NCBI GenBank assembly: GCA_002269645.1
Contig: NIVC01001462.1
Coordinates: 186,001 to 250,000 of the forward strand
Length of the DNA stretch: 64,000 bases
Direction: 5' to 3'
Source of the DNA: Macrostomum lignano
Taxonomy: Eukaryota
Below are positions 1-62,974 of the stretch, in pieces. Under the pieces are notes generated by a model. It saw only the letters and a list, made by a program, of their open reading frames with translations, ran no database searches and was not told the DNA's origin. Position 1 is the first letter of the stretch, and the number at the start of each line of letters is the position of its first letter. A program made the position numbers and the translations under genes.

Positions 1-1733
1 CCGAATTTGAAGTTGCAATTGCTGAAACTACCACTCAGATGAATATGTAGCTCCGGTCGAACAGTATCGGCCGAAGATGCTTGAACGTCAACCTTGACAT
101 TTTGGACTGACGTCGTCATTCCAACACTTGCCACCCGCTTTGGGACCTCGGAGATAGACGTAGCATCCCCCGCCGAATCCATATCGCCAGAAGGTCCGAC
201 GATAGCCACAGACTTATCGTTGGTCGCAGAAGACGAACTGGCTCCATACAGCGATGCTGACAACACGTCGGACATCTTGCCCAGTTCACTCGCCTTGCGC
301 TTGCCATTTGTTAAGTAGCTAACGAAAGTGCGTACAAAAAATGTTTTTTTACTTTTAAGTACACAATGTACTACAAACAGGAGAATTTTATTGGCAGCCC
401 GATGCTGACACTTACCGCTGAACAGTCTTCACGTCTTTATGGCCAGTTATTTTGCAGATCTGCTCCAAACGAAACCCGGCTTCGTGCAACTCAGAAATGA
501 CGGTTGGACGAACGCTGTACCCAGTGTAGACTTTGGACAACTGTGCAGTCGCTGAAATCCGAGCCATCAGATTCTGAAGCGCATTCACGCCCATTGGCTT
601 TGTTGTGTACCAGTGAACAGCCTTTTTGCCGATGCTAGGCATAAGAAACAGAGGCATGTTACTCTCGGCAGTCCCAGCCGAAAGGCTAGCCTAACGCTTT
701 TCCAAGTACAACTTGATCGCAGCCACAGGGCAGTGCTCTCCGCCGGTCGACTTCACAATGGCTTCTCGATTGTCTTCCATTGCGCCCGGCGATATAGTCT
801 AGTGCCGACGGTTTTCTCGAGTCCTCCATTAAGTCGCACAGTCTCCACTCCACTCCGCAACTCAAACACCAGACTGTTAACATTGAGCGATCGGAGCCAT
901 TCACGACCTCGCTGACCGAAGTAATAGAGCAGAATGAAGTACACCTCGTGTAGAAGCTTCGTCCCATTTGAGCGGTCGAAGTACGTCCACAGTTTGTTCA
1001 GATCGTCCTTCTCCATCGCCTTGTAATGCCGAATGCGACCGCCATTTTTTAGGAACATTCGACAAACGGCCTGCAAGGCTAAATTCACAATATGAAACTT
1101 TTCACCTTCAACGATGTTAATGGCCCTGGTACGCCTGAAATACCGAAACAAGCCGGCTCGAAAGCAGATTAGACTAGACGGTGCGTAGAAGCTCCCATCC
1201 TGCTTTCTAAGAGTGGCATAGAAGAACTTCAGCTTTTCCGCAAGCTCGTCCTCAGTGCAGGATCCAGCTTCAAAGCTTTCGAATTTGTACTCTCGAAGAA
1301 ATACTTGGAAGCGGGCAATAGCCGATTCTTCTTGCTTTTCGGTAGAGATGACCTTGGTCTCCTCGTCCTGTCTGTCGACAATCGCTTGCAGTTCAGTTGT
1401 GGAACCTCCAACATCCGGAATTGATTCCGAGTCTTCACCATCCACCAAGGGAATCAGATTGAAAAGTTCTTCCAGAGTAGGTAGGAGCGGCTCATCATCG
1501 AACATCGTCCGCTCGATCAACGAATTTCTGTCCATGAGCTCTACATGCTTCTCGATTTCCGCCGTAGTCAAGCCGGTTATGCAATTGTCCGGGAATTGAG
1601 ACAGATGAATCATGTTTTCAAATGAACGCACACTGAGACGAACAAATATCGCGCTGTAGTGGAGAGAAAGATATTCCTTGCCTCCCTCAACCCTGTTCTT
1701 TGCAAATTGCCATAGACAAAAATGAATAGCCAC
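1..1733 (-). mobile_element. Crypton-type tyrosine recombinase (DUF3504-like) transposon gene, decayed, intron-containing, runs off window start
   Basis: ORF 753-1733 has FYATLRKQDGSFYAPSSL..RAGLFRY and YFGQRGRE. After a frameshift near 810 and two TAG stops the frame continues CPVAAIKLYLEKR, KPMGVNAL, TGYSVRPT (HxxR box, H to Y) and ITGHKD. A GT-AG intron at 415-319 restores R-Y (catalytic Tyr), and the frame ends in an FSNCNFKF tail. Confidence 0.85.
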
Positions 1734-2079: not shown

Positions 2080-2610
2080 TTACTCGAAACTAATGACTAC
2101 ACTGTTGGTCTCACCGTTGACATCATTCCGCATCTTCTTTCTAGTAGGAATATCCGCATCTCGCTGCACCCTAGTTTCAGCCACTGACTCCGTCGTGACC
2201 TTCTGCGAATTTCATTGCTGAGTCTAAAGCCTTCCTGCTTTCGGTGAACTCGACATCAGTCCATAAGCACCATTGTTGCCCGACCACGTTTCGCATGTGA
2301 TATTGGAGCATTGAAAAAAAGTCCTTTAATGTGCCGGCTGAATATCTTTCATTCCGTGTCGTTCTCACCTCTGGAATAAACATCTTCAACAAGTAGTTAA
2401 AATCGTTCTTCGTGAATTCCTCCATATCCTTTAATACCATTAAAGATGGTCCGCCTGATGTAGCCCACTGGTTCTTCTTGAACTGATGCCATTCACGAAA
2501 TGTAGCGATCATCCACTCACAGTTTCTTATTGTGTTTGGCGGAAGAGTACTTTGAATCAAGGCGTCTACTTCAACGTCCGTCAGGCTTTCAAACCGTTCG
2601 CTAGTCATGT
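2080..2610 (-). pseudogene. Internally deleted Crypton (N-terminal binding domain joined to C-terminal tail, catalytic domain missing)
   Basis: Reads MTSERFESLTDVEVDALIQSTLPPNTIRNCEWMIATFREW...FIPEVRTTRNERYSAGTL...FTESRKALDSAMK. A shifted frame then ends PTRKKMRNDVNGETNSVVISFE*. Confidence 0.75.
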
Positions 2611-4731
2611 GAAAATCTATGTTGCATATTTGATCTGCTGACAATAGTATCTTCTTTATATTCCCACTGGGAACGGTTATGTCGTTTACGACGTCGTTTC
2701 GACATTGCATGTCGCATCGAAGAGGTTCAAAAAAAAATTTTTTTCTTAAAATCACTATGCACTGAGCAGCAAAAAATAATATTTTTTGCATTGAAGGCAA
2801 ACGCAGACCCTAAAATAAAATTCTTTGCTACGTCGTATTTATGCTGCACTAAATACTTTCGTTGCGACCTGAGTGAAAATAATTTGAATGACAGGCTTTT
2901 GTAATATTAAATTTAGCTAGTAAATCATGTATCCTAACCACAAAAAATTATGAATGTCTTTTCACACTTCTTTTGCACAAATAGTAGCAGCTTGCTCTTA
3001 TATATTCGTTTCATTGTTATAATTGATAAAGTGCAAATTGGCCGTCCAAAAAATTTAATTTGTTCTCTCCCTGCTTTTTGTATTTGCATATACTGAAATT
3101 CTCACGTCGTCTGCTGCATATTTTGTACAGTGATGATTACTGATTAGAACGCTTGTTAGCTTTAGTAGCTCTGCCTGCTTGCTACCTAGCACATGTCATT
3201 GCCTTATTTGGTAATAGTATATTGTGTATACTGCATGAATCCCGTGTTCCAAGTTTTATTTTTTTCTGGCTTTGCTTGCATAATTAAAATAATTTGGCAA
3301 TGGGATTCATTAGGGTTACGAATATTATAAAAGTAGACTTTATAATTTGGATTGCATTGGGTATATGATATAATATCCACATTTCACATATATCTGTCTA
3401 CAAATTTGAATGTTAAAAAATGAAATTTAGCTAGGCCTAGGGGCCTACCTATAGGTTTTAATAATTAATAATTAAGTTTTAATAATTCTGTATTAATATA
3501 TTTTCTTTTTTATTTAAACAAGGAATAGAAAGTAGGAATGTTATATATTTCCATATGTAACATAATATATTTGTTGTCATATATGGTTAATAATTAAAAA
3601 AGATAGACAGGCCTAATGGATATTTATTATCAATAAATATTATAACTCCAAGCAATATTACTCATAATATTACTAAATATTACTCAATTATTTTTATTTT
3701 TAATCCTAATGGCTATGGAAATTTTTAGTGGGTAAATTTTTAAAGCTTTATTTGCCCAAAACTTGATTGCAAACTTGCAACCAGGCTTTAATTAAAATTG
3801 GTTTCAAAATCAAATGTTTAATTGCAAATTGTAAGTTGCAATTAATTGCAATGCAAATAATGTTAGATTTTATTTTTTAGCTAATTAAAAACTAAGATTA
3901 AAAATAGCCAATTGTTATTTGTATGGTTAACTAGCCAATTGGTCTAATGCAAATGGAAAAAAGTTTTTGGACAAAATGTTAGGGTTAGGATTAGGTTTGG
4001 GTTAGTATTTGTATTTTCTAAACCTGATAGCTTCTTTAGTTAGATTCTGTTTGATTTTACATATTGCAAAATAGTTCATTTAGGCCTTAGATAGTAGGAA
4101 TATAATTTGAATTTAACCATTAGAATAATAACTACCTTAAAAATAATAAAATTATCGGCAAAACTGGATATAAACATTAGAAGAAAAATAAAAAGACTCA
4201 AAAAGGGGACAAAAGATTTGAAAAGGTAAAGGGACCAAGAAAAGGATAAAGTATTTAGAAAATATTAAATTTATATTTATATTATAATTGATCTTAAGAA
4301 AAATAATAGTTGCAAATCTTGCAACTATTATCCAAATAAAAACCTATAGATACATTTAAGTATATATGAAAGTGTAGAGGTTAGGGTACTGAGGTGCTGA
4401 GGGCTAAGCCCATCTTTCTGGTTATATGAGACAAACAATGCTACATTTGATTTCCCTTCTATACCATTATAATATATAGTTATTTATTGTTTTAGTAACT
4501 TGGTTTCCACTTTTCAATTTCAATATTTAAATCCTGAATCCTGACATAATCACAACTTCCAACCCTAGGATCCCATAATCCAAATATATATTTATAGTAT
4601 TTCTTTTTGTTGGCAATTGTAGTTTGTAGCAAGTTTAAATGAGTTTATAGTTGCTTAAATAGTAAAATAAGACCTGGAACTCCATTTTGGAATGAATTAA
4701 CAATCATATTTCCCAATATTCTGATTTTCAG

Positions 4732-5260: not shown

Positions 5261-7602
5261 ATGCGGTTTGCCATACATGCGCAACAGTCGGCCGAGTCGG
5301 CCGATCCGGCCAACCGATTTGGCGGCCAACCAAGGAAGTCGCAAAAATGCCAACCCGAAAAAACACCGAGTAGTAGTACTAAGTAGCTGACGAGGCATTT
5401 TGGGTTTATAAGACAGTTATAGTTACTCCTGCCGTTTACCCAAAGTTGCGTTAATTTTGCTTTTGGGTTTTTTACATGTAAGTCGCATTTTTGGCCATAA
5501 AGTACGTCGCATTTTTGTTAAAACTAAGTCGCACGGCCGACCGAAATTTGGAGGTTGCGCATGTATGCGGTTTGCGGTCAGGTTTTTCAGTTTTTCCAAG
5601 ATCTCTACATTTCTCCATACAGGTCACGTGAAATTCAAATCGGTATTTACAAACTTTCATCCCGGTATGTTCGGAATTTTCGGCCGAAGCGCAAGTGCAT
5701 TATCATACCGCGAGGTTGCAGTGAGTTTGTAATTATCCCGTTTTGCAACTAAATTTGCCTTTGTTCCACTACTGTTAATTCCTGACGTGTCTCTGTATTT
5801 ATGGCGGATTCATTTAGTTGCTGCTTGATTTGTTAATGGTATTGTTTAATGCTGCACCAATTTTGTTAGTTTAAGTGCTACACCAACTTTAATTTTTTTA
5901 ATGCTACACCAATTTTACTTGTTTAAATGCTACACCAGACTTGGCAGATTCTGTCATCAAAATGTGCAAGTGTCCAAGAGCTGTCGATTGACAGCACGTT
6001 TTTTGTGTACAAACTTTCTGTCTATTCCTTCCTAATTTCTCGTGACTTCTGCGTCTAAATGTTTTGTGTTTTGTAGTTTTGTGTCGTAAAATATGCTCTC
6101 GTTATCGCTCAGTGTATTTTTTGTTATTCCATTATGTGTGGCCAATGTTAATTTGACTTTTTCATGTTGCATTTTGACTTTTATGTTTGTGCAATTATAA
6201 GCAAATTAAATTAATCGAAGCAGTTCTCGTCTGGTTGGTTACACCCTGAAAACCTGTTTGTTACAAATGGTTGTTTTAATTAAATGGATCATAATAGTTG
6301 GTTTGTTGTTAACATTCAATTTAACATTATAGCGGATGATATCTACAGTATAAAAGACAGTAGTATACTACATGTAGTATGAAATATCATGCAAAACGAC
6401 GTCGATACGATCTGCTTACGACGTCGAATTCATACTGAAATCTTAGGTCGCAACGACGTCGTTGAACCGGAAACTCGGTAACCTTCGAAACGACGTAGAA
6501 AAACGACGTCGTTACGACGTGACATTTCCCAGTGGGTTTCTAACCTTATTAATTTCTTTGTCTATGGTTCCTAGTGACTCAATGCAACTGTATCTTTCTT
6601 TTGTGTTAAGATTCGATAGCTTCTTTTATTAAAAAAGGAATACAAGCGCTACGAGCCGCTGCAGAAAATAAAATACTACAATTCAAATCGGCCTAAGTCT
6701 TCATCTTCAAATTCTTCTACACACGTAACACTCTATATATTTATAATTATTCGCTTTTTTGCTTGCTCTTAATTATTTTATTTTCTTTGTTATTATGTGG
6801 TTTCAGCCTGTACCTTGTTTAAATGCTTAGCCATAGACTACAGCTTTGACTTGATTTAAGTTTAAAAATATTGACATTGAAAAAAATATATACCATTTAT
6901 ATATAGAATGCTAACGTAGCTTTAAAAAGTGAAGCCGATTTTCGCGTTCCGCCGGGAGTTTGGCTTTGGACCATAGACTAAAGTGTCTTGAGCTAAAAAT
7001 ACATTTGTGATAAATATACTCGCACAAGTGCCGCCTCGTTTAAATGGCCGACTTTACACCTTATCCAATGTATCTTATCCGATATACCAATTCTGGAATC
7101 CTAGAATTTATTATACCTTTTACAACTATTAGAAGGCCATATATTGGTCTCCAACAGGGGCAACTTAAACAGCAAAACGCTTGCACTCAATTTTCTCGGA
7201 AATGAACTGAAGGCCCGGAAAGGAATGTATGCTCTTTCAGTTTTTCTTTACCGAATTCGCCTATGACGAAACGCCATTTAATGCTATTGCGTTCTCTACG
7301 AGTGGAGCCACGCAGTGTTGGGCCCAATTCCGATACTCCGATGCTTACTTTAATACTACCGGCGATAGCTTTTGGGTATCCGACTTTTAATTATCGGCGT
7401 TACTTTTTTCAGAGAGGGTAAAGCACACTGAATGCACTAGCCTCAGGCCTCAGACTCATTTCTAGGAAAACCGAGTGTATAGTGTACTTTTACTTCAGTT
7501 GTCATTAGTCTCCAAATGTAAATTATTTATTGCCTTTGTTATCGTTATTAGACCTCTGAAGTTGATAATGCCATGGCTCATTTATTAGTTTCATTAGTCC
7601 AT

Positions 7603-8205
7603 AGTAGAAGGCATGAGGGGGCTTTTGGGACAAAATTTTTCACATCCTCCATAATCCCATTAAATCCATCCATATTATCCCTGACAGAATCAGAAAAAAA
7701 GGGGGGTCGCACTTGCTCACAAAACGTCCTCCATAATCTCATTAAATCCATCCATATTATCCCCGACAGAATCATGAAAAAGGGGAGGGGTCGCACTTGC
7801 TCTGAAAACTTCGAACATAATCGTATTAAATCCATCCATATTATCCCTGACAGAATCAGTGCATAACAGATGTCCACTAACACCTGTTATGTTCACTGAC
7901 ACTGACATCCACCCATAGCATCTTCGAAACAATCAGAAAAAAATCTGCATTCTTCTCCCCACATTCAATTCGCAACGCGAAGCGGCGAAACCAAATCCCA
8001 AAGACTTTAAATCATCAGCGCAGGGTCCTTACCCTTTGAAAAAAAATTAATTTCTCAATAAAAATGTTTCCAGTTGTCTCTCCAGGTTCCTATTATACTC
8101 AGCCTCATCCATTGTACAAATCCAAGTACCAATGCAAACTAGAATGCAGCGAATACATGAGAAAATATTGGCCCGACGTTGATATCAATGTCCCTAATAT
8201 TAATC
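7603..8205 (+). repeat. Left terminal repeat (603 bp) of the Polinton
   Basis: Appears identical by eye to 23385-23987. Begins AGTAG right after gtccat. Contains about 3 copies of a ~90-bp unit (attaaatccatccatattatccc.gacagaatca). Confidence 0.92.
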
Positions 8206-8303
8206 TAGCTCTCCAAAGACACTGGTTTCATAAGTATGGAGTAACCTACGTAAAAGATTACGACAGCTATTATAACTTTGCAGAAATCATTAGGCAATTG
8301 TAA
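8064..8303 (+). CDS. Small viral ORF (79 aa) straddling the TIR boundary
   Basis: ATG preceded by an A-tract. The paralog at 23846-24082 has a homologous but diverged C-terminus, which implies coding constraint. Confidence 0.65.
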   Translation: MFPVVSPGSYYTQPHPLYKSKYQCKLECSEYMRKYWPDVDINVPNINLALQRHWFHKYGVTYVKDYDSYYNFAEIIRQL

Positions 8304-8309
8304 TTTTTC

Positions 8310-8481
8310 TTACATTCTCTCAATGATCAACGTCAATACAAACTCTTCACCGTTGAAATCAACACCCACCCCATCTTCAGTCTCAAACTGTAGCACAATC
8401 TCGTGAATCTCCTTATTACTCAATACAACTCTTTTCACTGGATTTGGTTTCTCTACCAGCATCTGTCCTCCAGCTACAGAG
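8310..8481 (-). repeat. Inverted 172-bp copy of the minor-capsid gene 3' end
   Basis: Reverse complement matches 21791-21962 with about 4 mismatches. Confidence 0.92.
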
Positions 8482-8890
8482 GTTAGGGTGAGGAAAAAAT
8501 TACTTATAGTAAATGGTGAGTGTTTTATTGCGTCAAATATCTGTCAGCTGACGGAAATTTGCGGAAACGCGGCAAATTTCCGTCAGCTAGTCAGAATTCT
8601 GACAGAAAGGAATGCAATCCTTTGTGTGGCTGCCCTCACCCTTTGTACACCAAATTTCATTCCTCCGTACAATCTCTATTATTCTCAAAAGGGAACTTCC
8701 CTTCTACTCCCTTCCCTTTTCTTCCTTCTCTTTCTTCTCTCCCTTCCCTTCCTCCCTTCTCAACACTATAGGAACAAATTTCTCTTCCCTTCTCAAAAGG
8801 GGAAGCTATGTTTCTGCAGCCATATATATTGGGTAGATTTTTTAATCACTCAGCTTTCGCCGCGCTTCCTCACAAAAAATTCACTAGAAA

Positions 8891-9352
8891 ATGTCTGGCC
8901 TTGCCACAGTTAGAGCTAGGAGAGCTACGGCGCAGATGACGGCTGTGGTTTATAGAAATGTCTTAACAACCCTAAAGCCCGAAACTTTATTCAATCAAAT
9001 GGACGACCAAGTTCTCGTAGACGCTTCAGAAGAAGTGCTAAAGAAGACCGAAAGGTTTATCCAAAATTTAAGACGATTTAAACAACAACTAGCACGCCAA
9101 AGAAACTATGACGAGCAAGAAGCAGTCGCTCTGCAGACTCGCAACATCCGCAACATTGAGTTGCCACCACCACCGCCACCATACCAAGAAGCTCAAGCTC
9201 AAGCTCAAGCTCAACCTGAAGCTCAACCTGAAGCTCAAGCTCAAGCTCAACCTCAAGCTCAACCTGAAGCTCAAGCTCAACCTCAAGCTCAACCTGAAGC
9301 TCAAGCTCAACCTCAAGGCAACCAACGGTCGCGACTTCCCCGACGAATCTAA
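8891..9352 (+). CDS. Viral hypothetical protein, 153 aa, with PPPPP and QAQP repeats
   Basis: Clean ORF with an AAAATG start inside the element. No recognisable domain. Confidence 0.65.
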   Translation: MSGLATVRARRATAQMTAVVYRNVLTTLKPETLFNQMDDQVLVDASEEVLKKTERFIQNLRRFKQQLARQRNYDEQEAVALQTRNIRNIELPPPPPPYQEAQAQAQAQPEAQPEAQAQAQPQAQPEAQAQPQAQPEAQAQPQGNQRSRLPRRI

Positions 9353-9921
9353 AATAGCGCGCGACACAAAAAATCAATAAACTGACTTATTATTCTACTT
9401 GTGTGTTGTGTGTTTTCACACAAAAAATAAAAATACCATCTTTTTGAACACATGTTGACTCACTTGAGTCACTTTTACCATGTTTAGATTGAAAATATTT
9501 TTGTCGTCAATTTTTTTCATTATTGAAGCAGAATATAAAAAATATTATAGATATGAAGGAGAAGGAATTCTAGATTTTTTAACTTCTGCAGAAAATTTAG
9601 TTAAAGATAATCTACGAGCTCAAGCTGGTTCAGGTGTTGGATCAATTGCAACACTGTTAAAGGGTCAATAGATGCTGCAAAATCTGCAAACGGTGCAAAT
9701 GGTTGTTGTGAACCGCTATGTTTTAATAACTGTCGGAATTTTTTTTGCTCAACAGAAACTGTCGGAAAACTGCCTCAAATACAGACAAACTCAACCTGTC
9801 TGTATTTGACGATGTCTGCATTGACGATGAACGCAGATTTGGCGTGTGCAATGCAAATCCCCCTCCCGGTTCTCTCTTCTCCCAAACACCCACCCAGTCC
9901 AGCTGAATTTTCTTGCTTGAA

Positions 9922-10371
9922 TCATTCTGCTCTCTCAACCCCCAGCTCTTTCAGCAGTCTTCCTAATTTTTTACTTGGCGCGTGCAAGACAAAGCCCGCC
10001 CCCAAACAGCCACCGACCCCCAATCCCAACTTTGCCTTACTAAAAATAACAGCTTTAACTAGCTTCCGAGCGATCGATTCCTTCCACCCGCTTGAAGCCC
10101 CTATATTGTCTAGTCTCCTAAGCATTTCTTTGTCCCAGCGATTCTTCTCCTCAGGAAAATCTCTATATTTAACGTCGTGCCACATGCAGACAGAGTCTAG
10201 CTCGTTCACAGGCTCATGCCCAGGATTTGGATTATCGTTTGTATCTAACTGTATTTCAAGTGGATTCAAAGGCCCGCAATATTTATAGCCGGGAATGGTC
10301 CAGCCTTTGTTTGGATGAGGAAGCTTTTCTATCAGTCCATGTGAATCTAACTTACCACCAGAGCGTTGCAT
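9922..10371 (-). CDS. Parvovirus-type phospholipase A2 (PLA2X-like)
   Basis: PGYKYCGP Ca-loop and ELDSVCMWHDVKY catalytic HD..Y motif. Confidence 0.9.
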   Translation of the reverse strand: MQRSGGKLDSHGLIEKLPHPNKGWTIPGYKYCGPLNPLEIQLDTNDNPNPGHEPVNELDSVCMWHDVKYRDFPEEKNRWDKEMLRRLDNIGASSGWKESIARKLVKAVIFSKAKLGLGVGGCLGAGFVLHAPSKKLGRLLKELGVERAE

Positions 10372-10400
10372 TATTTTATTTTAAATTTTATTTTTAAAAA

Positions 10401-11415
10401 ATGACAGATCAGAAACTTAAAAAACTCTACTACAGCGACAAAGGATTCTTTGTAGGAAAAAATGCAGTCACCAAACTCACAGAACTAAGTAAGGAACCAA
10501 AAGCTAAAGTAGAAAAGTGGCTCTCTAAGCAAGCAGTCTACCAAGTCTATTACCCACCAGTAAAATTTGAAAGGCCCCATTTCAGTATTTATAAACCTAA
10601 TGAAGCGCACCAAGCAGATCTTTTGTTTCTCCCCAACGACTCAGGCTACAAGTATGCTCTTACAATTACAGACGTTGCCTCCAGATATAAGGAAGCGAGA
10701 CCGCTTAAGACGAAGAAGTCAGAAGCAGTTGCAGCCGCCCTCCAAGATATTTATAAAAACTCTCCGCTCACATACCCCCAAATCTTTATGACCGACCCGG
10801 GTAAAGAATTCTATGGGGCAGTCAAATCCCTTATGGAAAAGAAAAATACAGAGATTCGCTATGGCAGAACAAACTTGCACAGAGACCAAGCGTGCGTTGA
10901 GAGATTCAGTCTAACTCTAGCCAAGAGGCTATTCACTAAGCAGACAGCGCAAGAACTCAAACTGAGTGCGGGGCAGTACTTTACCAAGTGGACAGACCGC
11001 CTCCCCACTGTTATAGAGCAACTGAACAATGAAGTCACACGCATGACTGGATTGAAACCATCCCATGCAATTAAACAAGACACTGTCGAACTTAAGGCAT
11101 CTCATAAAACAGACAACACACAACACAAAACACACCTCGAACTACCCTAAGCTTCCAGGAGTTGAATCACCATACATACTGACAAACTCTGAGTTTCCAC
11201 GCTTTTTATATCTACCTGGAGAGCTAGAGAAGGACACTAAAAGAAGAGCTACAGATCCATACTTCAGCCTTGATGTACATAAAATAGACAGACATTTTAC
11301 CTCCGACTCCGGTGACTATTACTTTTTATCTCAGGCCTTTAACCCTAAATCCCCCACGCGGTCATTCACTAGAGCTGAACTCCTAGTGATACCAGCGGAC
11401 ACAGAAATTAATTAA
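10401..11415 (+). pseudogene. Retroviral-like (rve) integrase, split by a frameshift near 11100-11150
   Basis: DDE motifs QADLL, MTDPGKEF and CVERF. The C-terminal part (LYLPGELE..KRRATDPYFS..SFTRAELL) is in another frame. Confidence 0.88.
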
Positions 11416-11431
11416 AATATTAAAATAAAAA

Positions 11432-11896
11432 ATGACAAAGATTGAAACCAGAACGATCAATAAACTCAATAAAATCATTGAATCAAATAAACCAGGTCTT
11501 ATATCAATTAAAGGTGTCAAAGTAAAAATCGATCCTACGCAGCAAATACTTCAGTGTAATGAGCAAAGACACAGCATCACAGATGAAAAGTCAGGAGGAA
11601 TCCTACCATTAGCAGCTCTTATTCCAATCATTGCAGGCGCTGTAAGTGCCGCAGGTGGTGTAGCTGGAGGTGTAGCAACTGCTGTTAAAGCTGGGAATGA
11701 AAGAGCCCACCAGCTAGAATTGCAAAAGATTGCAAGAGATAAAGGTATAACAATTAAGGCAGGAGAGGGCTGCCCGGATTTTGATGATCGTGATGATTGT
11801 GATGATTGTGAGCATGAAAATTCTGTAAGCAAGTCTGACATTGTCAAAGCTATCATGACACTGCACAATGCTGGGTTTACAATAATGCGGATGTGA
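11432..11896 (+). CDS. Adenovirus pX/mu-like core or membrane-lytic precursor
   Basis: SGG-ILPLAALIPIIAGAVSAAGG resembles the adenovirus pX tail GG-ILPLLIPLIAAAIGAVPG that follows a protease site. Confidence 0.6.
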   Translation: MTKIETRTINKLNKIIESNKPGLISIKGVKVKIDPTQQILQCNEQRHSITDEKSGGILPLAALIPIIAGAVSAAGGVAGGVATAVKAGNERAHQLELQKIARDKGITIKAGEGCPDFDDRDDCDDCEHENSVSKSDIVKAIMTLHNAGFTIMRM

Positions 11897-12019
11897 TGAG
11901 GTTTAAAACCTTACTTTATCCAGCTTCATAAACCTAGCGCTACTTATAGGATGTAGAAACAGTTCAACTTTTCTATCAGGGTGGTCACCCTCAAAAATTT
12001 TTTTCTTTTAGAGAAAAAA

Positions 12020-21962: not shown

Positions 21963-22665
21963 TGTTAAAATAACTAAATATTTTATTTCAGTTCTATTTC
22001 GAATTTTTAGTATATTTTTTCTAGTCATATTACTTATTAGTATGCAACCTCACGCTTTTTGGACTTACCAAGCATTATTTTTTTTCTAACCAGTATTTAG
22101 TGAAAGGATTGAAAACACAAAAGAAATCGGACACAAAAAGATAGTCTGTGCTCAGTCTGTTGTTTTATTATGTCAAAAGTTGGTTAACTTCGCAAGTATT
22201 CGCACATAACAAACACAAGTCTGTCATTAGTCTTTCTCAGAAAAAAACCTTTTTTTTGCACAGTTGAATTCGTGCGAATTCCTGTTAAGACAGGAAATGG
22301 CGCGAATCCAACTGCGCACTGGTCTTTCTCAGAAAAATACTATTTTGCACAGTTGAATTCGTGCGAATTCCTGTTTCCTGACTCTCCCGAAGCGAACCGC
22401 GCTGCGGACATTGGCACCACCGGATCTCCCTGCACGACACCGCAGCACCAGATGCCCGTGGTCTCCAGGAGTTAGCGGAATTGGTGGCGAGGCCTCCCGC
22501 CCAGAACCCCCCTGCAGCTGAGTCAAGTCAATCCAATAAGTGCCAAGATACTGGTGTGTTTAGAATAAACCGTTTTTAAATTTTGAAATAACTTAAAATT
22601 TATTTATGAATAAATAAAAACAAGTCAATTTTTTAAGCTTTATAAAACTTAGAGCCGAAAGCAAG

Positions 22666-23271
22666 TCAAGCTGTCTTGAACTCGATGAGGTACCTTGGGG
22701 TGGCCTGTCTCGGGTCGTACACCAAAAATTCGTCGTTTCTCACGCTCCTACTCTCCCTGGAGTCTCTCGGGGCAAACACCGAATCAAAGCCTTCAGCTTT
22801 TAGCGTTTCAAAATTGAGATTATTTTGAGCGGCTCGATACACTTGCTGCCTTCCAAGAAGCACATCGCACAACAGCAACCACTTGACGCCGTTTTCTTTG
22901 CAGTACTGCGCGCTCTTAGTGCTGTCCGTGGCGAAGTAGATCCCTGCGCCGTACATTCCACCGTTGCCTATATTGAAGCCATCGGTAATGATTTTCTCAG
23001 CACTGATCTGCCTCGTTCTGTGGAACAGCTGCTCTGTTGGACAGTTGCGGTTGTGCAGCTGGCGTCGAAAATTTCGCGTCCGCTTGTCCAGCACAGGGTT
23101 TTGTATACGCTCGATGCTGCAAATCTCCTTGATGACAATTCCGTGCTCAGGTCTGGTGTAGCGAAGAACGCGATCTTCGATTCTCAAATACTCGGCCAAA
23201 GTTTCCGGCTGGCTTTTTGATAGCATGGTTCGAACAACTTCCGTCGAATTCAAAATGCTGCATCTGCTGAT
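22666..23271 (-). CDS. PARP-type ADP-ribosyltransferase terminal exon (copy 1), orphaned by viral insertion and inversion
   Basis: ttattacag acceptor. Motifs FHRT, GMYGAGIYFATDSTKSAQY and NDEFLVY..QATPRYLI. Confidence 0.85.
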   Translation of the reverse strand: MSRCSILNSTEVVRTMLSKSQPETLAEYLRIEDRVLRYTRPEHGIVIKEICSIERIQNPVLDKRTRNFRRQLHNRNCPTEQLFHRTRQISAEKIITDGFNIGNGGMYGAGIYFATDSTKSAQYCKENGVKWLLLCDVLLGRQQVYRAAQNNLNFETLKAEGFDSVFAPRDSRESRSVRNDEFLVYDPRQATPRYLIEFKTA

Positions 23272-23384
23272 CTGTAATAAATAACTAGTACTCTTTAAAT
23301 ATGATGTTTTGATGGTGACTCTGGCCAAATTTTGTCCTGCCTTGCTTTGAGATAAATCGGTCTAATGTAATTAGTATTATGGAC

Positions 23385-23987
23385 AGTAGAAGGCATGAGG
23401 GGGCTTTTGGGACAAAATTTTTCACATCCTCCATAATCCCATTAAATCCATCCATATTATCCCTGACAGAATCAGAAAAAAAGGGGGGTCGCACTTGCTC
23501 ACAAAACGTCCTCCATAATCTCATTAAATCCATCCATATTATCCCCGACAGAATCATGAAAAAGGGGAGGGGTCGCACTTGCTCTGAAAACTTCGAACAT
23601 AATCGTATTAAATCCATCCATATTATCCCTGACAGAATCAGTGCATAACAGATGTCCACTAACACCTGTTATGTTCACTGACACTGACATCCACCCATAG
23701 CATCTTCGAAACAATCAGAAAAAAATCTGCATTCTTCTCCCCACATTCAATTCGCAACGCGAAGCGGCGAAACCAAATCCCAAAGACTTTAAATCATCAG
23801 CGCAGGGTCCTTACCCTTTGAAAAAAAATTAATTTCTCAATAAAAATGTTTCCAGTTGTCTCTCCAGGTTCCTATTATACTCAGCCTCATCCATTGTACA
23901 AATCCAAGTACCAATGCAAACTAGAATGCAGCGAATACATGAGAAAATATTGGCCCGACGTTGATATCAATGTCCCTAATATTAATC
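23385..23987 (+). repeat. Right terminal repeat of the Polinton, now in direct orientation
   Basis: Appears identical to 7603-8205. Preceded by atggac, the reverse complement of the left flank gtccat. Confidence 0.9.
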
Positions 23988-24082
23988 AAGCACTTAAATC
24001 TCACTGGTTTGAAAAACACGGAGTAGTCATTAACAATTTTGACAGCTATTATAACTTTGCTGAAGTTATAAGGCAGTTGTAG
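23846..24082 (+). CDS. Small viral ORF (78 aa), paralog of 8064-8303
   Basis: First 47 codons are identical; the tail is homologous at protein level. Confidence 0.6.
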   Translation: MFPVVSPGSYYTQPHPLYKSKYQCKLECSEYMRKYWPDVDINVPNINQALKSHWFEKHGVVINNFDSYYNFAEVIRQL

Positions 24083-24292
24083 TAGCCAACTACACGGTTT
24101 TACCCTGTAGAGTGCAGACGCAAGATCTAAAAATACTGACAAAATCATGTGCAGCATATAGCGGCTCGTATTAGTTACATTTGTAAGCGATAGCTTACTG
24201 ATAGTAAAGCCATTTGAACATGGCGCGAATTCCTCACATGGTGGACTAGAAAATGTCGCCATGTGCAAGGGCGTATAAATAGCAGTTCCACT

Positions 24293-27335: not shown

Positions 27336-28296
27336 GCCCGTAATTTGCATTAAAGTAAGTGTGACTCCTGCAAGCGGGCTTAAATGTAGTCTATGGCATT
27401 AAAAGGCAAGAATAAGTGCCCAGCGGGCACAAAGGTCATGGTACAATGACAATTGATGCGTTTCCCGTCCCCCTTTTTAGTTGTCCCTACTTTTATATTG
27501 AAAAGCCCTTTGCTAAGAAGATTTCAAATCACAATAAGGTACTGGCGTATGCTCTGATGTCACAGATTCTGGTAGACACGCATTTTCTTTGTTTTCCTAG
27601 TTTTTAAAGACCTAACGATTTCAAATGAATTTATTCTCAATGATAATTTATCTAATCAATAAATTGTATAATACTTGTAAACTTCACTACGACTCGTGAA
27701 AAGCATCTGAGTGAGAAATGATAGGAGTAACTACTCGAGCTATGGTTAAGACTGGAAAACTACATAATGCAAGCAGATGTGATACGAAATGGAATACGAT
27801 ACGTAAATTTGGTGATTGCAAAACAATAAATATTTTTCAAGTCTTTATCAGCTCTCATCCAAAGTGATTGACAATAAACAGCAAAATGAGCAAGCAACTA
27901 AATATAGAAAATTTAGCCCCAAGCCATTTTCGCTTCACTGTACAGTCGCGGAGTGTGAAAGAAAGTATCGTACACAGTGAGTGTACTTGTACCTCGGCAG
28001 GCGGGCGGAGATGGGTTGCTTTCAAACTCTGCTATTTTATAATTTTGAAGTTGCTTATTTTCTTAAAGCGTGACATTCAGAGATTGTAGAAGCAAACTCT
28101 AATTACATGATAAAGGAGCTCGTATCAACGGTGTTTGCAGCGTCATTAGAACCTTAGCAAACCGAGAATGGGAAACTGTTACAGCAAACGGCGTTCGACG
28201 GTAAAACCAACTTTCGACTGTTTTCTTTTGTTGAAGTTCTCTTTTGTAATTTTGACTGTATCAAATTATCATCCTCCTGTGTCCTACTCCCTATAG

Positions 28297-28953
28297 TCGA
28301 GGTCACTATATGAGGTACAATGCGAGTCTGTAGCCAGCGAGCTGCATCTTGAGCACCTACGACACGCCAGACCAACGACACGAGTAAAGCGCGTCCCCAT
28401 CACAGCGGCAAACAAGAAGACCGTCGCTGAGTACCATCGCATTCGCGACAGGGTCGTACGATATGTGAAACCCGAGCACAACACAAACGTCAACATCCTG
28501 AGGATTGAGAGAATCTGCAACCCAGTATTAGACCAGCGTCTTTACCGTGCGTTTGACCAGTTGCATAAAAAGGACTGCTTTCCTGAGCTGCTCATTCACG
28601 GGACACGAAGCAAATTCGCTGAGAACATCATTAGCAACGGCTTCAATATTGGCAAACAAGGAATGTTTGGCGCAGGGATCTACTTTGCCACCGACAGCTC
28701 AAAGAGTATCCAATATGCTAGCGATAATAAAGTCAAGACGCTGCTTCTCTGCGAGGTGCTTCTAGGAAAGACGCTGATTTGCACATCTGCCCAAACAAAC
28801 CTCAACCTGCAGACTGTGCAGAATCAGGGTTATGACTCGGTGTTCGCCAGGAGAGGAACGAAATCAACTCAAGGAGTCCGCAATGATGAGTACATTGTCT
28901 ACCGGACTGAGCAAGCTACACCAAGATATTTAGTCAAGTTTACAACTTCGTGA
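28297..28953 (+). CDS. PARP-type ADP-ribosyltransferase terminal exon (copy 2); upstream exons not resolved
   Basis: ccctatag acceptor, open to the stop. Motifs IHGT, GMFGAGIYFATDSSKSIQY and NDEYIVYRTEQATPRYLVKF. Confidence 0.85.
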   Translation, partial: SRSLYEVQCESVASELHLEHLRHARPTTRVKRVPITAANKKTVAEYHRIRDRVVRYVKPEHNTNVNILRIERICNPVLDQRLYRAFDQLHKKDCFPELLIHGTRSKFAENIISNGFNIGKQGMFGAGIYFATDSSKSIQYASDNKVKTLLLCEVLLGKTLICTSAQTNLNLQTVQNQGYDSVFARRGTKSTQGVRNDEYIVYRTEQATPRYLVKFTTS

Positions 28954-29501: not shown

Positions 29502-30238
29502 ATGGGAAGTACAGCTTCTAGGAAAAATAAGGCAAACCGCAATTCAGCAGCAACACGAAGACAGGTAAATTAAGTTTTAAAACCATACGTTTTCCTATAT
29601 GAGCTACGTTCTATATTTGCATGGAAACACTATTCTGATTTGATCCCTAAATGCAGGTCAGAGGTAGAGGCGAACTGAAGCGCACAGAAATTAAAGAGAA
29701 CGACGAGAACACTGCTCAAGAGTACTTTAAAGTGCTGGACAGAGTAGGAAGATACATCCGAGACGAGCACAATTTTAGAGTAGAAATACTGAGCATTGAG
29801 AAGGTTGAGAACCCGGTACTTGATAGGCGCTTGCGCGAAGTTTCCCAGCGAATGCACGGCAGAAGCCGTAGGCCGGAGCTGCTCATTCACGGTACAAGAA
29901 GCAGATTCGTGGAGCAAATGATCAGAGACGGTTTCAGCTATCAAAGAAAAGGCCTGTTTGGTCAGGGCTTCTACTTCTACACCGACAGCACCAAAGCTGC
30001 TCGAGGCTGCGGTAGAGACGCTACAAAGTGCCTCCTACTTTGCGATGTGCAGTTGGGCAACAGCATGGCGATGGAATCTGCTGACAGGAGCCTCAATTTG
30101 AGCAGAGTTGAGTCAGCCGGATTCGACTCGGTTTACGGCGTTCGGGGTACCAAGGAATCCGGGGGCGTCTTCAACGACGAGTATGTTGTGTTCCGGACCG
30201 AACAGATTGCACCAATGTACCTCGTCAGGTTTCGAGAG
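29502..30238 (+). CDS. Exons 1-2 of a gene: MGSTAS myristoylation-type N-terminus spliced to a PARP domain (copy 3)
   Basis: Exon 29502-29564 (21 codons, cag|gtaaat) is in frame with exon 29657-30238 (atgcag|gtc, ends gag|gtgagc). Motifs IHGT, GFYF and NDEYVV. Confidence 0.75.
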
Positions 30239-31233
30239 GTGAGCAAATGCACAGCGCATATTTTTGTCTGCTCAACTTATGCTAGGAGTTAATTCTTTGT
30301 TTTACTTATATTTACATTTTTGTTTTTTTCGAAAATTTACAAAACGCTTTTGAGGATTTGGATAATCTTGGATCGAAATGAGCCACTCGTCTGTCGATTT
30401 CTTTAACTGATTGATTGCCAATAGCAGATTGTACTTTACATTAGCCAATTAAACACTACGAGAGTAGAACCTATTGTCTGTAACTTTTCCAGGCTGACAA
30501 TATTTTTTTAGGAAATCAATGAATTCGAAATTACGCATCAAATTTTGTATAATCAACGACCGTATGGTCCATAGGCTATAGGCGACTGAACACCAAGCTG
30601 TATTCAGTTTGATGATCGAAGATTTATTTACAATTTGATGAAAGCAAACGGTTGAGTACATTATCGTGCTATTGCAAAACAAGAAAATCAAATTGCCTGT
30701 TTGGAAGTTGAGTTGAACTGTCAGTTTCACTCCTAATATCTGCTGTTTACCTATACCAAATTCAAGGGTTTATTGAATGTGCATGGTTTTGAAACGTTCC
30801 ATTGAAACTCACCACGATAGTTGGCGTTATAGATGTTCCCCAATGTAAAACTCATTAGAGATGGTCTCCCGAATTGATACTTCACCGTCTTTAACAACGC
30901 GTCGCACTCAATGTTCTGATGAAGACATTGCACAGAAGTCGGCGTGGGCATCGCGTCTTTCTCGAGTGTAGTGCTCTAACGCTCTCCCTGTCATTTATGG
31001 CTAGTTAGCGATTAGCGATTTTTCCTTAGTTGACGCGTAGTACAAATACCAGTCATCAGAAACATTCTTGCACTGCTTCGGAAAGAGATTATCAATGCTC
31101 AGTTCATCCGGACACTGTAGATACGCGCGCAGAGCTGACGAGTCCCGACGGCTTACGTGCGCTTGAGGCGTCCTCGAACGAGAAACGAAGCCTTAGCATT
31201 CTTGATAATAATGCCATGATTCAAGACAACAAA

Positions 31234-31753
<520 letters not shown>

Positions 31754-32319
31754 AGACAAAGAGAGGGGAGAGAGGGAAAGGGAGGGTAAGAGAGAGGGAG
31801 CAAAATTCCATGAAGGTACATTGGACACGATACAATATAGAATGCACATCTATTCAAGTTTGGTTTTATTCTAACCGGATTGCAGTATCTCAGTATTTTC
31901 TATCTCAACAATTCGCTGCAATTGTCTCAACTCAGCCAGTGTATAGGAAGGCCACTAGCAAAAGCGCATTACACCGTTGGCTCTCTATATAGTGTACGTT
32001 CTATCTGTTGGCGTCTCAATTATAAATAGCTTTGATGCACCCATGAAAGAGAGCCGTTGCTACAGCTAAGCATTTTTGGGCTTCTAAATATCCTTGAGAA
32101 TTTAAATTTTCTCGGTAGCTGCTTAAGGGCAGACAAACTGGGCAATCAGGCGAGCCGAAGATCGGCTGCCAAGCTTGCCAGGAGCAGAGCGAGCATGGCT
32201 GAGTCAGTGAACTCCACCAGCATTCAGTTAGACTACACTGTTCCTGAGAATTTTCAGAAAGGCATTGCTCATTCAGCAGTTTTTGTTAAATTCTGTCGAA
32301 CAGCCAAAGAGCATAGAAA

Positions 32320-50899: not shown

Positions 50900-51520
50900 A
50901 ATGGTGTTTCTTTATGTTTGACATGATGGCTCTTTTATGCTTGACATGGTGGCTCTTTAATTTTTGACATGGAGTCACATATATGTTTGACATGGAGTCA
51001 CATATATGTTTGACATGGAGTCACATATATGTTTGGCATAGAGTCACATATATGTTTGACATTGAGTCACGTATATGTTTGACATGGAATCATGTATATA
51101 TTTTACATGGTGGCTCTTTTATGTTTGACATGGCTCTTTAGTGTTCAACATGGTGGCTCTTTAATGTTTGACATGGTGGCTCTTTAATGTTTGACACAGT
51201 GGCTCTTTTATGCTTGACATGGTGGCTCTTTAATTTTTGACATGGAGTCACATATATGTTATGTTTGACATGGAGTCACATATATGTTTTACATGGTGGC
51301 TCTTTTATGGTTGACATGGTGGCTCTTTATGTTTGACATGGTTGCTCTTTAATGTTCAGCATGGTGTCACTTCAATGTTTACATGGAGTCATGTATATGT
51401 TTGACAAGGTTACTCTTTAATGTCTGACAAGGAGTCACAAATATGTTTGACATGAAGTCATATATATGTCTGACATGGTAGCTCTTTAATGTTTGACATG
51501 GAGTCACATAAATGTTTTAC
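50900..51520. repeat. Degenerate 23-bp minisatellite (tatatgtttgacatggagtcaca)
   Basis: Read directly from the sequence. Confidence 0.85.
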
Positions 51521-62807: not shown

Positions 62808-62974
62808 CGGCCTTACTGGCTATTCATGACCTTCTCATTCAGAATTTCCTGTTTACTTGTTTCTTTAGCTTGGAGGCGTTTCTTTTATTGTGTTTAATGG
62901 GTTAAATTTTCACGTATTTATCTGAATGAAAAGGACGGAAAATTCTGTGCATACATATGTCACATTCCCATGTA

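What the first reader, a model, noticed from the sequence alone, without database searches (positions are those of the whole stretch)
7603..24290. Endogenous adintovirus-like Polinton with an intact virion module, inserted just upstream of a PARP catalytic exon
Seen: major capsid, minor capsid, ATPase, PLA2 and putative core genes are uninterrupted ORFs. Once the right-end inversion is undone, the target site lies about 105 bp upstream of the splice acceptor of PARP copy 1, i.e. in its last intron. Known: Polintons/adintoviruses integrate through an rve integrase with 6-bp duplications. Inference: a 16-kb viral insertion that probably knocked out a member of a putative defence gene family. The co-location may be chance.
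Basis: partly seen in the sequence, partly recalled or inferred. Interest (0 to 1): 0.72.

Follow-up and report, generated by a model that had tools for sequence, protein, structure and literature searches.

The report
Defective Polinton provirus beside flatworm PARP exon
A 15-kb virus-like Polinton/Maverick element sits in a Macrostomum-like flatworm genome just upstream of one exon of a PARP gene family; its capsid genes are open but its polymerase and integrase are broken, so it is an ordinary, probably young, non-autonomous endogenous virus whose position next to PARP cannot be told from chance.

Summary
A Polinton/Maverick (adintovirus-like) provirus starts at 7603, with an 879-bp terminal inverted repeat, an AGTAGA terminus and a 6-bp target duplication (GTCCAT). 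It holds 1.42 kb of host DNA with a PARP catalytic exon, plus the outer 700 bp of the right repeat. Viral DNA ends at 24081/24082, not 24290.

Major capsid, putative penton, packaging ATPase, PLA2, a pX-like core protein and several unnamed ORFs are open. The integrase carries one frameshift. By published criteria this copy is defective.

The host is a macrostomid flatworm. The PARP exon is 84% identical to a Macrostomum lignano protein, and homology begins exactly at the predicted splice acceptor, 107 nt from the insertion. No upstream exon was found anywhere in the window. The "knocked-out defence gene" reading is therefore unproven, and one insertion says nothing about site preference.

Orthopolintovirales insertions in rhabditophoran flatworms are already reported. 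This is a new member of a known kind, from a rarely sampled capsid lineage.

The parts
7597..7602 (.). Left copy of the 6-bp target-site duplication (GTCCAT)
   Evidence: Read directly. Its reverse complement flanks the flipped right terminus.
7603..8481 (+). Left terminal inverted repeat, 879 bp. It has an outer part 7603-8302, a 9-nt spacer, and an inner part 8312-8481 that copies the 3' end of the penton ORF. The terminus reads AGTAGA. Three to four 82-84-bp subterminal repeats lie inside.
   Evidence: The terminal motif resembles the (AGT)2 end motif reported for vertebrate Mavericks (PMC8097293).
8064..8303 (+). Small ORF (79 aa) carried inside the left repeat, function unknown
   Evidence: No Pfam match. 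A second copy sits at 23846-24082.
8891..9352 (+). Open ORF, 153 aa, with an (A/P)(Q/E) repeat tract, function unknown
   Evidence: no significant family.
9922..10371 (-). Parvovirus-type phospholipase A2-like gene, open, 149 aa
   Evidence: Pfam Phospholip_A2_4, E 1.5e-13, 51 bits against a cut-off of 23.9.
10401..11415 (+). rve-type integrase, broken by one frameshift
   Evidence: Pfam rve, E 2e-9. The 337-aa integrase next to PolB in locus L005 aligns over 91% of its length in two frames at up to 51% identity.
11432..11896 (+). Adenovirus protein X (mu core protein)-like gene, open, 154 aa, with a Gly/Ala-rich hydrophobic stretch
   Evidence: Pfam Adeno_PX, E 4.9e-7, 30 bits against a cut-off of 25.
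11981..15287 (+). [quoted passage not shown] Catalytic motif C is absent.
   Evidence: Pfam DNA_pol_B_2, E 4.6e-17. There are 2077 relatives, the best at 40-41% identity and about 1250 aa long. All 11 homologues tested align in two frames and leave 157-217 of their residues unmatched. The motif C pattern is present in all 11 homologues and absent from all six frames of 7603-24290.
15284..15616 (+). Adenain-like cysteine protease, open, 110 aa. It is 15-39 residues shorter at one end than its three closest relatives, and it cannot be decided whether that is a break.
   Evidence: Pfam Peptidase_C5, E 3.3e-4, 20.8 bits against a cut-off of 21.3. 1927 relatives in the representative library, the best at 61% identity.
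15621..16286 (-). Open ORF, 221 aa, with a hydrophobic Gly/Ala/Ser-rich segment, function unknown
   Evidence: only sub-threshold matches.
16397..17047 (-). Open ORF, 216 aa, coiled-coil-like. Its homologue in relative L002 lies directly after the penton gene.
   Evidence: E 5.6e-14 to L002 2915-3571.
17064..17873 (-). A32/FtsK-type genome-packaging ATPase, open, 269 aa
   Evidence: Pfam Pox_A32, E 4.1e-6, 26.9 bits against a cut-off of 22.8.
17883..18072 (.). Tandem array of about nine 21-bp units just upstream of the ATPase ORF
   Evidence: family D13.
18094..18606 (-). Open ORF, up to 170 aa, function unknown. It overlaps the end of the next gene in another frame.
   Evidence: no family.
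18500..19756 (-). Open ORF, 418 aa, Q/P-rich, divergent from the capsid gene, conserved in the relatives. It may be a virion or core protein, but the function is unknown.
   Evidence: 43-55% identity to the genes upstream of the capsid gene in L001 and L002. No Pfam family.
19787..21073 (+). Double jelly-roll major capsid protein, open, 428 aa
   Evidence: Pfam DJR-like_dom, E 7.6e-5, 22.5 bits, below the cut-off of 27. Nine relatives of 360-438 aa, all carrying PF21738, up to 77% identity with full coverage. The low-confidence AF2 model (pLDDT 51) has Foldseek top hits that are nearly all double jelly-roll capsid proteins.
21084..21962 (+). Putative penton (minor capsid) protein, open, 292 aa. 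Its last 170 nt form the inner part of the right repeat.
   Evidence: It sits directly after the capsid gene, as in L001 and L002 (56-60% identity, full length). The fold is not confirmed: no PDB sequence match and the AF2 model is unusable (pLDDT 33).
21791..21960 (-). Inner part of the right terminal inverted repeat
   Evidence: 98% complementary to 8312-8481.
21961..24081 (.). Flipped 2.1-kb segment. It holds host DNA with the PARP exon, one copy of the target duplication and the outer 700 bp of the right repeat. Nine nt of repeat spacer are absent at the junction.
   Evidence: In the M. lignano locus L003 the PARP gene and the sequence matching window 27490-28176 lie on the same strand, but in the window they lie on opposite strands.
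22666..23271 (-). Host PARP catalytic exon ('copy 1'), an open frame that starts at an acceptor
   Evidence: Pfam PARP, E 4e-26. 84% identical to M. lignano A0A1I8GHB6 residues 139-339. 81% nucleotide identity to L003, running about 107 nt past the stop. H-G-T reads H-R-T.
23379..23384 (.). Right copy of the target-site duplication, now reading ATGGAC on the + strand
23385..24081 (+). Outer part of the right terminal repeat, flipped into direct orientation
   Evidence: There are 0 mismatches in the first 603 nt, and 71 of 97 aligned columns are identical in the last stretch.
23846..24082 (+). Second copy of the small repeat-borne ORF (78 aa). Its last 31 or so codons differ from the left copy.

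Best explanation
An integrated Polinton/Maverick (order Orthopolintovirales, adintovirus-like) of about 15.06 kb, in the genome of a Macrostomum-like flatworm.

Shown:
- It carries the family's gene set: protein-primed PolB, rve integrase, adenain-like protease, A32-type ATPase, a double jelly-roll capsid gene and the ORF that follows it, plus a PLA2 gene and a pX-like gene.
- It has 879-bp terminal inverted repeats, an AG-type terminus and a 6-bp target duplication.
- Segment 21961-24081 is flipped. Both breakpoints lie outside coding sequence: one in the 9-nt spacer between two convergent stop codons inside the right repeat, the other in host DNA 1.42 kb beyond the element.
- The morphogenesis genes are open.
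- PolB has one frameshift and one deletion, with motif C gone. The integrase has one frameshift.

Inferred:
- The element entered by integrase-mediated insertion into AT-rich sequence 107 nt upstream of the catalytic exon of one member of a local PARP family.
- The 2.1-kb inversion happened afterwards, by two double-strand breaks and end joining.
- The copy cannot replicate or integrate on its own.
- The 603 identical outer repeat bases argue that the insertion is young. They also suggest that at least some lesions predate it (a defective genome mobilised or packaged with help from an intact relative), or that the repeats were homogenised.

The effect on the PARP gene is undetermined, and the position next to PARP is most simply chance.
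For: - Gene set: Pfam; 2077 PolB relatives; capsid relatives; 1927 protease relatives; Foldseek hits to double jelly-roll capsids.
- Ends: repeat geometry and identity; GTCCAT and its reverse complement.
- Inversion: the two right-hand repeat pieces stop within 9 nt of the same repeat coordinate. The hexamer match has a 1/4096 chance.
- Orientation: PARP orientation relative to the downstream block is opposite to that in M. lignano L003. Three of the four other PARP copies are on the + strand.
- Defects. Neither frameshift zone holds a homopolymer run of 6 or more, so a simple sequencing slip is not the obvious cause.
- Host.
- Published criteria for size, repeat length, 6-bp duplication and 'intact versus fossil': PMC8097293.
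- PLA2 and pX genes in adintoviruses: PMC8502044.
Against: - No read-level or second-assembly evidence for the inversion.
- No empty site, un-inverted allele or sister copy could be retrieved.
- The penton fold is not confirmed.
- The capsid Pfam score and the protease Pfam score are below the curated cut-offs.
- The repeat is a mosaic that simple decay does not explain: 0 mismatches in 603 nt, then 26 differing columns in 97, then 3 in 170.
- Three disabling lesions plus an inversion alongside perfectly identical outer repeats is an uneasy combination. The order of events is inferred, not shown.
Confidence: 0.8

Rival explanations
1. The insertion landed in the last intron of a functioning PARP gene of a defence-related family and, together with the inversion, knocked it out.
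For: - The exon starts at a good acceptor, and homology to M. lignano A0A1I8GHB6 begins exactly there. That protein has 138 more residues upstream.
- Copy 1 alone has H-R-T instead of H-G-T, and a second Gly replaced. This fits relaxed constraint.
- The inversion now separates the exon from anything to its left.
Against: - No match to those 138 residues anywhere in the window, at E up to 50.
- The exon frame is still fully open.
- Two deviations in 39 invariant columns is barely above the 0-1 seen in the other close copies.
- Short catalytic-only relatives exist (P0012 at 178 aa, P0011 at 251 aa), so the upstream exons may not be obligatory.
- Nothing found here links these PARPs to defence.
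- With n = 1, nothing can be said about site preference.
Confidence: 0.3
2. The inversion is an assembly artefact. The real locus has a normal right end, with the PARP exon on the + strand.
For: No independent evidence for the junctions is available. An 879-bp inverted repeat is the kind of structure that troubles assemblers.
Against: - A mis-join across the terminal repeats would flip the interior of the element, not a segment running from inside one repeat into unique host DNA.
- Neither junction lies in repeated sequence.
- Nine nt are missing at the junction and both neighbouring ORFs still end in a stop codon. This looks like a repaired break.
Confidence: 0.08
3. Two elements. A first copy lost its outer right repeat, and the left end of a second, mostly deleted copy lies 1.4 kb downstream in the same orientation.
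For: The outer repeat at 23385-24081 is in direct orientation, as the left end of a second copy would be. Its inner 97 nt differ by about 27% from the left copy, as a different variant might.
Against: - It needs two independent truncations that end within 9 nt of the same repeat coordinate.
- It needs a flanking hexamer that is by chance the reverse complement of GTCCAT, a 1/4096 event.
- It does not explain why the PARP exon is reversed relative to the M. lignano locus.
Confidence: 0.04
4. The PARP exon is viral cargo, a host gene captured between the capsid module and the right terminus.
For: It lies between the outermost repeat copies (7603 and 24081).
Against: - It is 81% identical at the nucleotide level to a chromosomal M. 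lignano PARP locus, including about 107 nt of 3' flank.
- It begins at a splice acceptor rather than a start codon.
- It has four paralogues nearby in host DNA.
- The outer repeat next to it is in the wrong orientation for a terminus.
- The relatives L001 and L002 carry no PARP.
Confidence: 0.02

Closest known systems
Polintons/Mavericks of animals (Orthopolintovirales), for example the vertebrate Mavericks surveyed in PMC8097293
   Same: - Protein-primed PolB plus rve integrase plus the morphogenesis module (double jelly-roll capsid, ATPase, cysteine protease).
- Size of 15.06 kb, within the reported 12.7-24.6 kb.
- Repeat of 879 bp, within the reported 46-1447 bp.
- 6-bp target duplication.
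- AGT-type terminus.
- Like 96% of the vertebrate copies, it is defective.
   Different: - The PolB is only about 40% identical to the best of 2077 relatives.
- The capsid has just nine relatives among 5.8 billion proteins.
- The gene order differs even from its nearest relative L002.
- The repeat includes a small ORF and the 3' end of the penton gene.
- The right end is flipped together with host DNA.
Adintoviruses (Starrett et al. 2021, PMC8502044), especially the 'Alpha' (Mayetiola-class) virion module with a PLA2-pX gene
   Same: - Animal host.
- Adenovirus-like virion genes.
- A parvovirus-type PLA2 domain and an adenovirus pX-like domain are both present.
   Different: - Here PLA2 and the pX-like protein are two separate ORFs on opposite strands with the integrase between them, not one fused gene.
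- This copy is integrated and defective, not a free-ended genome.
- No phylogeny against reference adintoviruses was run.
Orthopolintovirales-related insertions in Rhabditophora flatworms (preprint 10.1101/2025.04.19.649669)
   Same: Same virus order and same host subphylum. Macrostomum is a rhabditophoran.
   Different: The preprint reports the association from a large screen. The specific element, its rearranged end and its PARP neighbourhood are not described there, as far as the passages read show.
Adenoviruses
   Same: Weak similarity to adenain, and a match to protein X above Pfam's cut-off. A double jelly-roll capsid gene is followed by a penton-position gene. Linear genome with inverted terminal repeats and a protein-primed PolB.
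   Different: It has an integrase and a PLA2 gene, is about half the genome size, and is integrated with a target duplication.

Membership tests
Polinton/Maverick (Orthopolintovirales) | [quoted passage not shown] | tested here: met
   Pfam DNA_pol_B_2, E 4.6e-17, 62.5 bits against a cut-off of 25.8. 2077 relatives, many in animal genomes. The gene is present but broken by one frameshift and one deletion.
Polinton/Maverick (Orthopolintovirales) | Retrovirus-like (rve) integrase | tested here: met
   Pfam rve, 38.1 bits against a cut-off of 32.6. 51% identity to the integrase adjacent to PolB in L005. The gene is present but has one frameshift.
Polinton/Maverick (Orthopolintovirales) | Double jelly-roll major capsid protein | tested here: met
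   Pfam DJR-like_dom, E 7.6e-5, but 22.5 bits is below the cut-off of 27. All nine relatives carry PF21738. Foldseek top hits are nearly all double jelly-roll capsids, though the model is poor at pLDDT 51.
Polinton/Maverick (Orthopolintovirales) | Single jelly-roll minor capsid (penton) protein | tested here: inconclusive
   The 292-aa ORF directly after the capsid gene is conserved in L001 and L002. It has no family or PDB match and the structure model is unusable (pLDDT 33).
Polinton/Maverick (Orthopolintovirales) | A32/FtsK-HerA type packaging ATPase | tested here: met
   Pfam Pox_A32, 26.9 bits against a cut-off of 22.8.
Polinton/Maverick (Orthopolintovirales) | Adenain/Ulp1-like cysteine protease | tested here: met
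   Pfam Peptidase_C5, E 3.3e-4, 20.8 bits, just under the cut-off of 21.3. 1927 relatives at E of 0.001 or better. A weak but consistent match.
Polinton/Maverick (Orthopolintovirales) | Terminal inverted repeats, 6-bp target-site duplication, AG-type termini | tested here: met
   An 879-bp repeat, GTCCAT and its reverse complement, and an AGTAGA terminus. All are met only once the flipped 21961-24081 segment is taken into account. Criteria from PMC8097293.
'Intact' (potentially active) Maverick in the sense of PMC8097293 | All conserved core ORFs uninterrupted, plus repeats and target duplication | tested here: not met
   PolB and integrase are interrupted. PolB lacks motif C. The right repeat is split by an inversion.
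Adintovirus (PMC8502044) | PLA2-like and pX-like membrane-active virion genes (Alpha-type module) | tested here: met
   Phospholip_A2_4, E 1.5e-13 and Adeno_PX, E 4.9e-7. They are separate ORFs here, not the fused PLA2X gene.
Adintovirus (PMC8502044) | Exogenous, free-ended linear genome | not testable with these tools
   This copy is integrated, with a target duplication. Relatives are seen only on short metagenome or read-assembly contigs.
PARP/ARTD catalytic domain (host exon) | PARP catalytic fold with the His-Tyr-Glu positions | tested here: met
   Pfam PARP, E 4e-26. The best solved relative is PARP4. His, Tyr and Glu columns are kept, but the Gly next to His, invariant in the seven other sequences, is Arg.

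The most novel reading that the evidence does not exclude
The element is a very recent integration of a still-circulating adintovirus lineage of macrostomid flatworms. It arrived as a defective genome carried by an intact helper. Its landing in, and the later flipping of, a member of a fast-duplicating PARP cluster reflects a real interaction between this virus lineage and a PARP-based host response, not chance.
Probability: 0.1. Interest if true: 0.6.

Novelty: new member of a known kind. Interest (0 to 1): 0.3.

Why it matters
Macrostomum is a laboratory flatworm model. A catalogue of its endogenous DNA viruses would be useful for annotation and for small-RNA and genome-stability work, including which copies keep open capsid genes.

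This copy documents a rarely sampled capsid lineage. It also shows in detail how such proviruses get scrambled together with host exons, which can mislead gene and TE annotation: a host PARP exon now lies between the outermost viral repeats.

It does not by itself show a virus-host conflict at PARP loci.

Tried and rejected
- Sister copies and empty sites. Searches with the capsid protein and with a nine-sequence capsid alignment found nothing in IMG/VR or the JGI metagenome contigs. Exact look-ups of the window's ATPase and of M. lignano A0A1I8GHB6 found nothing on record. No eukaryotic genome collection can be searched by DNA here, so the empty-site test could not be run.
- Upstream PARP exons. 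tblastn with the homologue's N-terminus, at default and at very permissive settings, gave only noise.
- M. lignano locus L003. It is a paralogue and not the orthologue (65% amino-acid identity). It served only for orientation and flank homology.
- Structure route for the penton. The profile search against PDB sequences found nothing, and the single-sequence AF2 model had pLDDT 33, so it was not searched further.
- Loci L004 and L005 (PolB about 40% identical). They share only PolB and integrase with the window at BLAST level, so they cannot calibrate the other genes.
- Rfam and tRNA scans found nothing. The bacterial promoter scan of the 21-bp array is irrelevant for a eukaryotic virus.
- Rejected ideas. 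An internal staggered-break inversion as the origin of the 170-nt inverted copy of the penton end does not improve the fit to L002's gene order. Repair-associated hypermutation as the cause of the divergent 97-nt repeat patch is unlikely, because all substitution types occur and the reading frame is kept.
- Consensus lines. The alignment tools print a majority consensus by default. None was used, copied or saved.

Full report
**What is in the sequence**

ORF listing and Pfam scans give the following on 7603-21962:
- a parvovirus-type PLA2 gene (9922-10371, minus strand)
- an rve integrase (10401-11415)
- an adenovirus protein-X-like gene (11432-11896; Adeno_PX, 30 bits, above the cut-off)
- a protein-primed family B polymerase (11981-15287)
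- a short adenain-like protease (15284-15616)
- two unnamed minus-strand ORFs (15621-16286 and 16397-17047)
- an A32-type ATPase (17064-17873, minus strand)
- two more unnamed minus-strand ORFs (18094-18606 and 18500-19756)
- a double jelly-roll capsid gene (19787-21073)
- a 292-codon ORF directly after it (21084-21962)

This is the Polinton/Maverick gene set with the PLA2 and pX accessories described for adintoviruses (PMC8502044).

**Ends of the element**

Self-comparison shows three things:
- 7603-8302 recurs at 23385-24081 in direct orientation.
- 8312-8481 recurs inverted at 21791-21960.
- Nothing in 24082-24290 matches the element.

The alignment adds detail:
- The first 603 nt of the outer piece have no mismatch.
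- The next 97/94 nt share only 71 columns, with an in-frame 3-nt indel.
- The inner 170 nt differ at 3 positions.

The hexamer left of 7603 is GTCCAT. The hexamer left of 23385 is ATGGAC, its reverse complement. The inner piece on the right ends, and the outer piece on the right ends, within 9 nt of the same coordinate of the left repeat.

The simplest account is a normal 879-bp inverted repeat and a 6-bp target duplication. A single inversion of 21961-24081 followed, running from the 9-nt spacer inside the right repeat to a point 1.42 kb into the host flank.

The two coincidences argue against two independent element fragments. These are the hexamer match (1 in 4096) and the coincident repeat coordinate (roughly 10 in 880). 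A mis-join across the terminal repeats would flip the interior of the element, not this segment.

Without the flipped host DNA the element measures about 15.06 kb. Its size, repeat length, AGTAGA terminus and 6-bp duplication all fall inside the published ranges for Mavericks (PMC8097293).

**State of the genes**

*Open genes.* The capsid protein aligns end to end with nine relatives of 360-438 aa at up to 77% identity. The following ORF aligns over its full length with the corresponding genes of L001 and L002. The ATPase, PLA2, pX-like gene and the four unnamed ORFs are also open.

*Broken genes.*
- Every one of 11 PolB homologues aligns in two reading frames and leaves 157-217 of its residues unmatched.
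- The polymerase motif C pattern is present in all 11 homologues and occurs in none of the six frames of 7603-24290.
- PolB therefore has one frameshift and one deletion of roughly 200 codons.
- The integrase of L005 aligns over 91% of its length in two frames, which means one frameshift.
- Neither frameshift zone contains a homopolymer run of 6 or more, so a trivial sequencing slip is not the obvious cause. The deletion cannot be a sequencing slip.

*Protease.* The 110-aa ORF keeps its conserved core but is 15-39 residues shorter at one end than its three closest relatives. Many other relatives are as short as it is. Whether this is a break is undecided.

By the criteria of PMC8097293 this copy is a defective element, like 96% of vertebrate copies.

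**Confidence in the virion assignments**

- The capsid Pfam score is below the curated cut-off. However, all relatives carry the same family. A low-confidence model (pLDDT 51) still finds almost only double jelly-roll capsid proteins in BFVD, with TM-scores of 0.35-0.41.
- The 'minor capsid' label rests on position, size and conservation only. A profile search of PDB sequences found nothing, and the single-sequence model is unusable.

**Host and the PARP exon**

The ORF at 22666-23328 (minus strand) is a PARP catalytic domain (E 4e-26).
- Its best relative is Macrostomum lignano A0A1I8GHB6 (84% identity).
- Homology starts at residue 139 of that protein and at window base 23271, directly after a ...ttattacag acceptor.
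- The M. lignano locus L003 holds a paralogue (65% amino-acid, 81% nucleotide identity). Its PARP exon and about 107 nt of 3' flank match the window.
- In L003 the exon is followed on the same strand by sequence matching window 27490-28176. In the window the exon faces the other way. This gives independent, if modest, support for the inversion.

The window holds four more PARP catalytic exons, three on the + strand. All similarity to M. lignano is 70-84%. The source is therefore a related macrostomid, or a diverged paralogous region, and not the deposited M. lignano sequence itself. Macrostomum belongs to Rhabditophora.

**Was a gene knocked out?**

The closest homologue has 138 residues encoded upstream of the acceptor, so an ancestral upstream exon is plausible. 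None is detectable anywhere in the window, even at E up to 50. That includes the 7.6 kb on the + strand to the left of the element, where the inversion model puts it.

The exon is still open. It has Arg for the Gly of the H-G-T motif and Ser for another Gly that is invariant in the seven other sequences. However, 2 deviations in 39 invariant columns is only slightly above the 0-1 of the other close copies.

Short, catalytic-only relatives exist. No paper in the library links Macrostomum PARPs to defence.

The disruption claim is therefore possible but unproven. With one insertion in a region holding five PARP exons, co-location cannot be told from chance.

**Age and history (inference)**

Zero mismatches in 2 x 603 nt suggest a recent insertion or homogenisation of the repeats. 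One frameshift in each of two genes, a deletion of about 0.6 kb and an inversion sit uneasily beside that. Either some lesions were already present in the integrating genome, or the outer repeats were converted after integration. A rough calculation does not exclude plain decay.

The divergent 97-nt patch is the 3' end of a small ORF carried in each repeat (8064-8303 and 23846-24082, both open). It shows all substitution types and keeps the reading frame. It looks like two alleles of a coding sequence brought together by recombination between strains. This remains unexplained (note 3).

**Relatives and novelty**

- The capsid has only nine relatives at E of 0.001 or better among 5.8 billion clustered proteins, all on contigs under 4 kb.
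- None was found in IMG/VR or the JGI metagenome contigs.
- PolB is at most 41% identical to its best relatives, which include endogenous copies in ants, molluscs and corals.
- The lineage is poorly sampled, but the kind of element is well known.
- A 2026 preprint already reports Orthopolintovirales insertions in rhabditophoran flatworms.

**Verdict**

- The element is a new member of a known kind, of modest interest.

Noticed in passing
window 7603-8481 vs 23385-24081 and 21791-21960: The terminal repeat is a mosaic. The outer 603 nt are identical. The next 97 nt or so are about 73% identical, with an in-frame 3-nt indel. The inner 170 nt are 98% identical, with all 3 mismatches within about 70 nt of the inversion breakpoint.
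   Followed up: partly
window 8064-8303 and 23846-24082: Each repeat carries a small open ORF (79 and 78 aa). The first 47 codons are identical and the last 31 or so differ. There is no family match apart from a sub-threshold Ribonuclease_T2 hit for one copy.
   Followed up: partly
window 17883-18072: An array of about nine 21-bp units lies immediately upstream of the ATPase ORF. It may be a regulatory or binding-site array of the element.
   Followed up: no
window 7612-7860 and 23394-23725: Three to four subterminal 82-84-bp repeats lie inside the outer part of each terminal repeat.
   Followed up: no
L002 2915-3571 vs window 16397-17047: In the relative L002, the homologue of the window's 216-aa ORF lies directly after the penton gene on the same strand. 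In the window it lies on the other strand next to the ATPase, and the penton gene abuts the repeat. Gene order therefore differs within this capsid lineage.
   Followed up: partly
window 22666-23271(-), about 28348-28953(+), 29651-30292(+), 40288-40842(+), 43349-44851(-): Five PARP catalytic-domain exons or ORFs lie within 22 kb, 37-54% identical to copy 1. One is a 500-aa single ORF with a coiled-coil N-terminal part. The closest solved relative is PARP4.
   Followed up: partly
window 753-1733(-) and 2177-2800(-): Two ORFs have QRICH1-domain similarity and faint phage-integrase SAM-like similarity. They could be a domesticated or decayed Crypton-type gene to the left of the element.
   Followed up: no
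Two MITE-like palindromes of about 140-150 bp lie nearby. A 44-nt direct repeat occurs at 24797 and 25458.
   Followed up: no
window 31122-31800, 47660-48390, 50857-51585, 56641-57620, 58390-59255, 60142-60795, 62921-63277: The right half of the window is rich in micro- and minisatellites, with units of 8, 54, 23, 31/32, 25/26, 27 and 31 bp. The 54-bp unit lies inside a long ORF.
   Followed up: no
window 31722-32085 vs L003 1845-2214: This stretch is 80% identical to a stretch of M. lignano L003, 1.1 kb from that locus's reverse-transcriptase gene (L003 3293-6685). It may belong to a retroelement family shared between the two genomes.
   Followed up: no
window 56163-56609: A protein kinase domain exon (Pkinase, E 1.3e-27), an ordinary host gene.
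   Followed up: no
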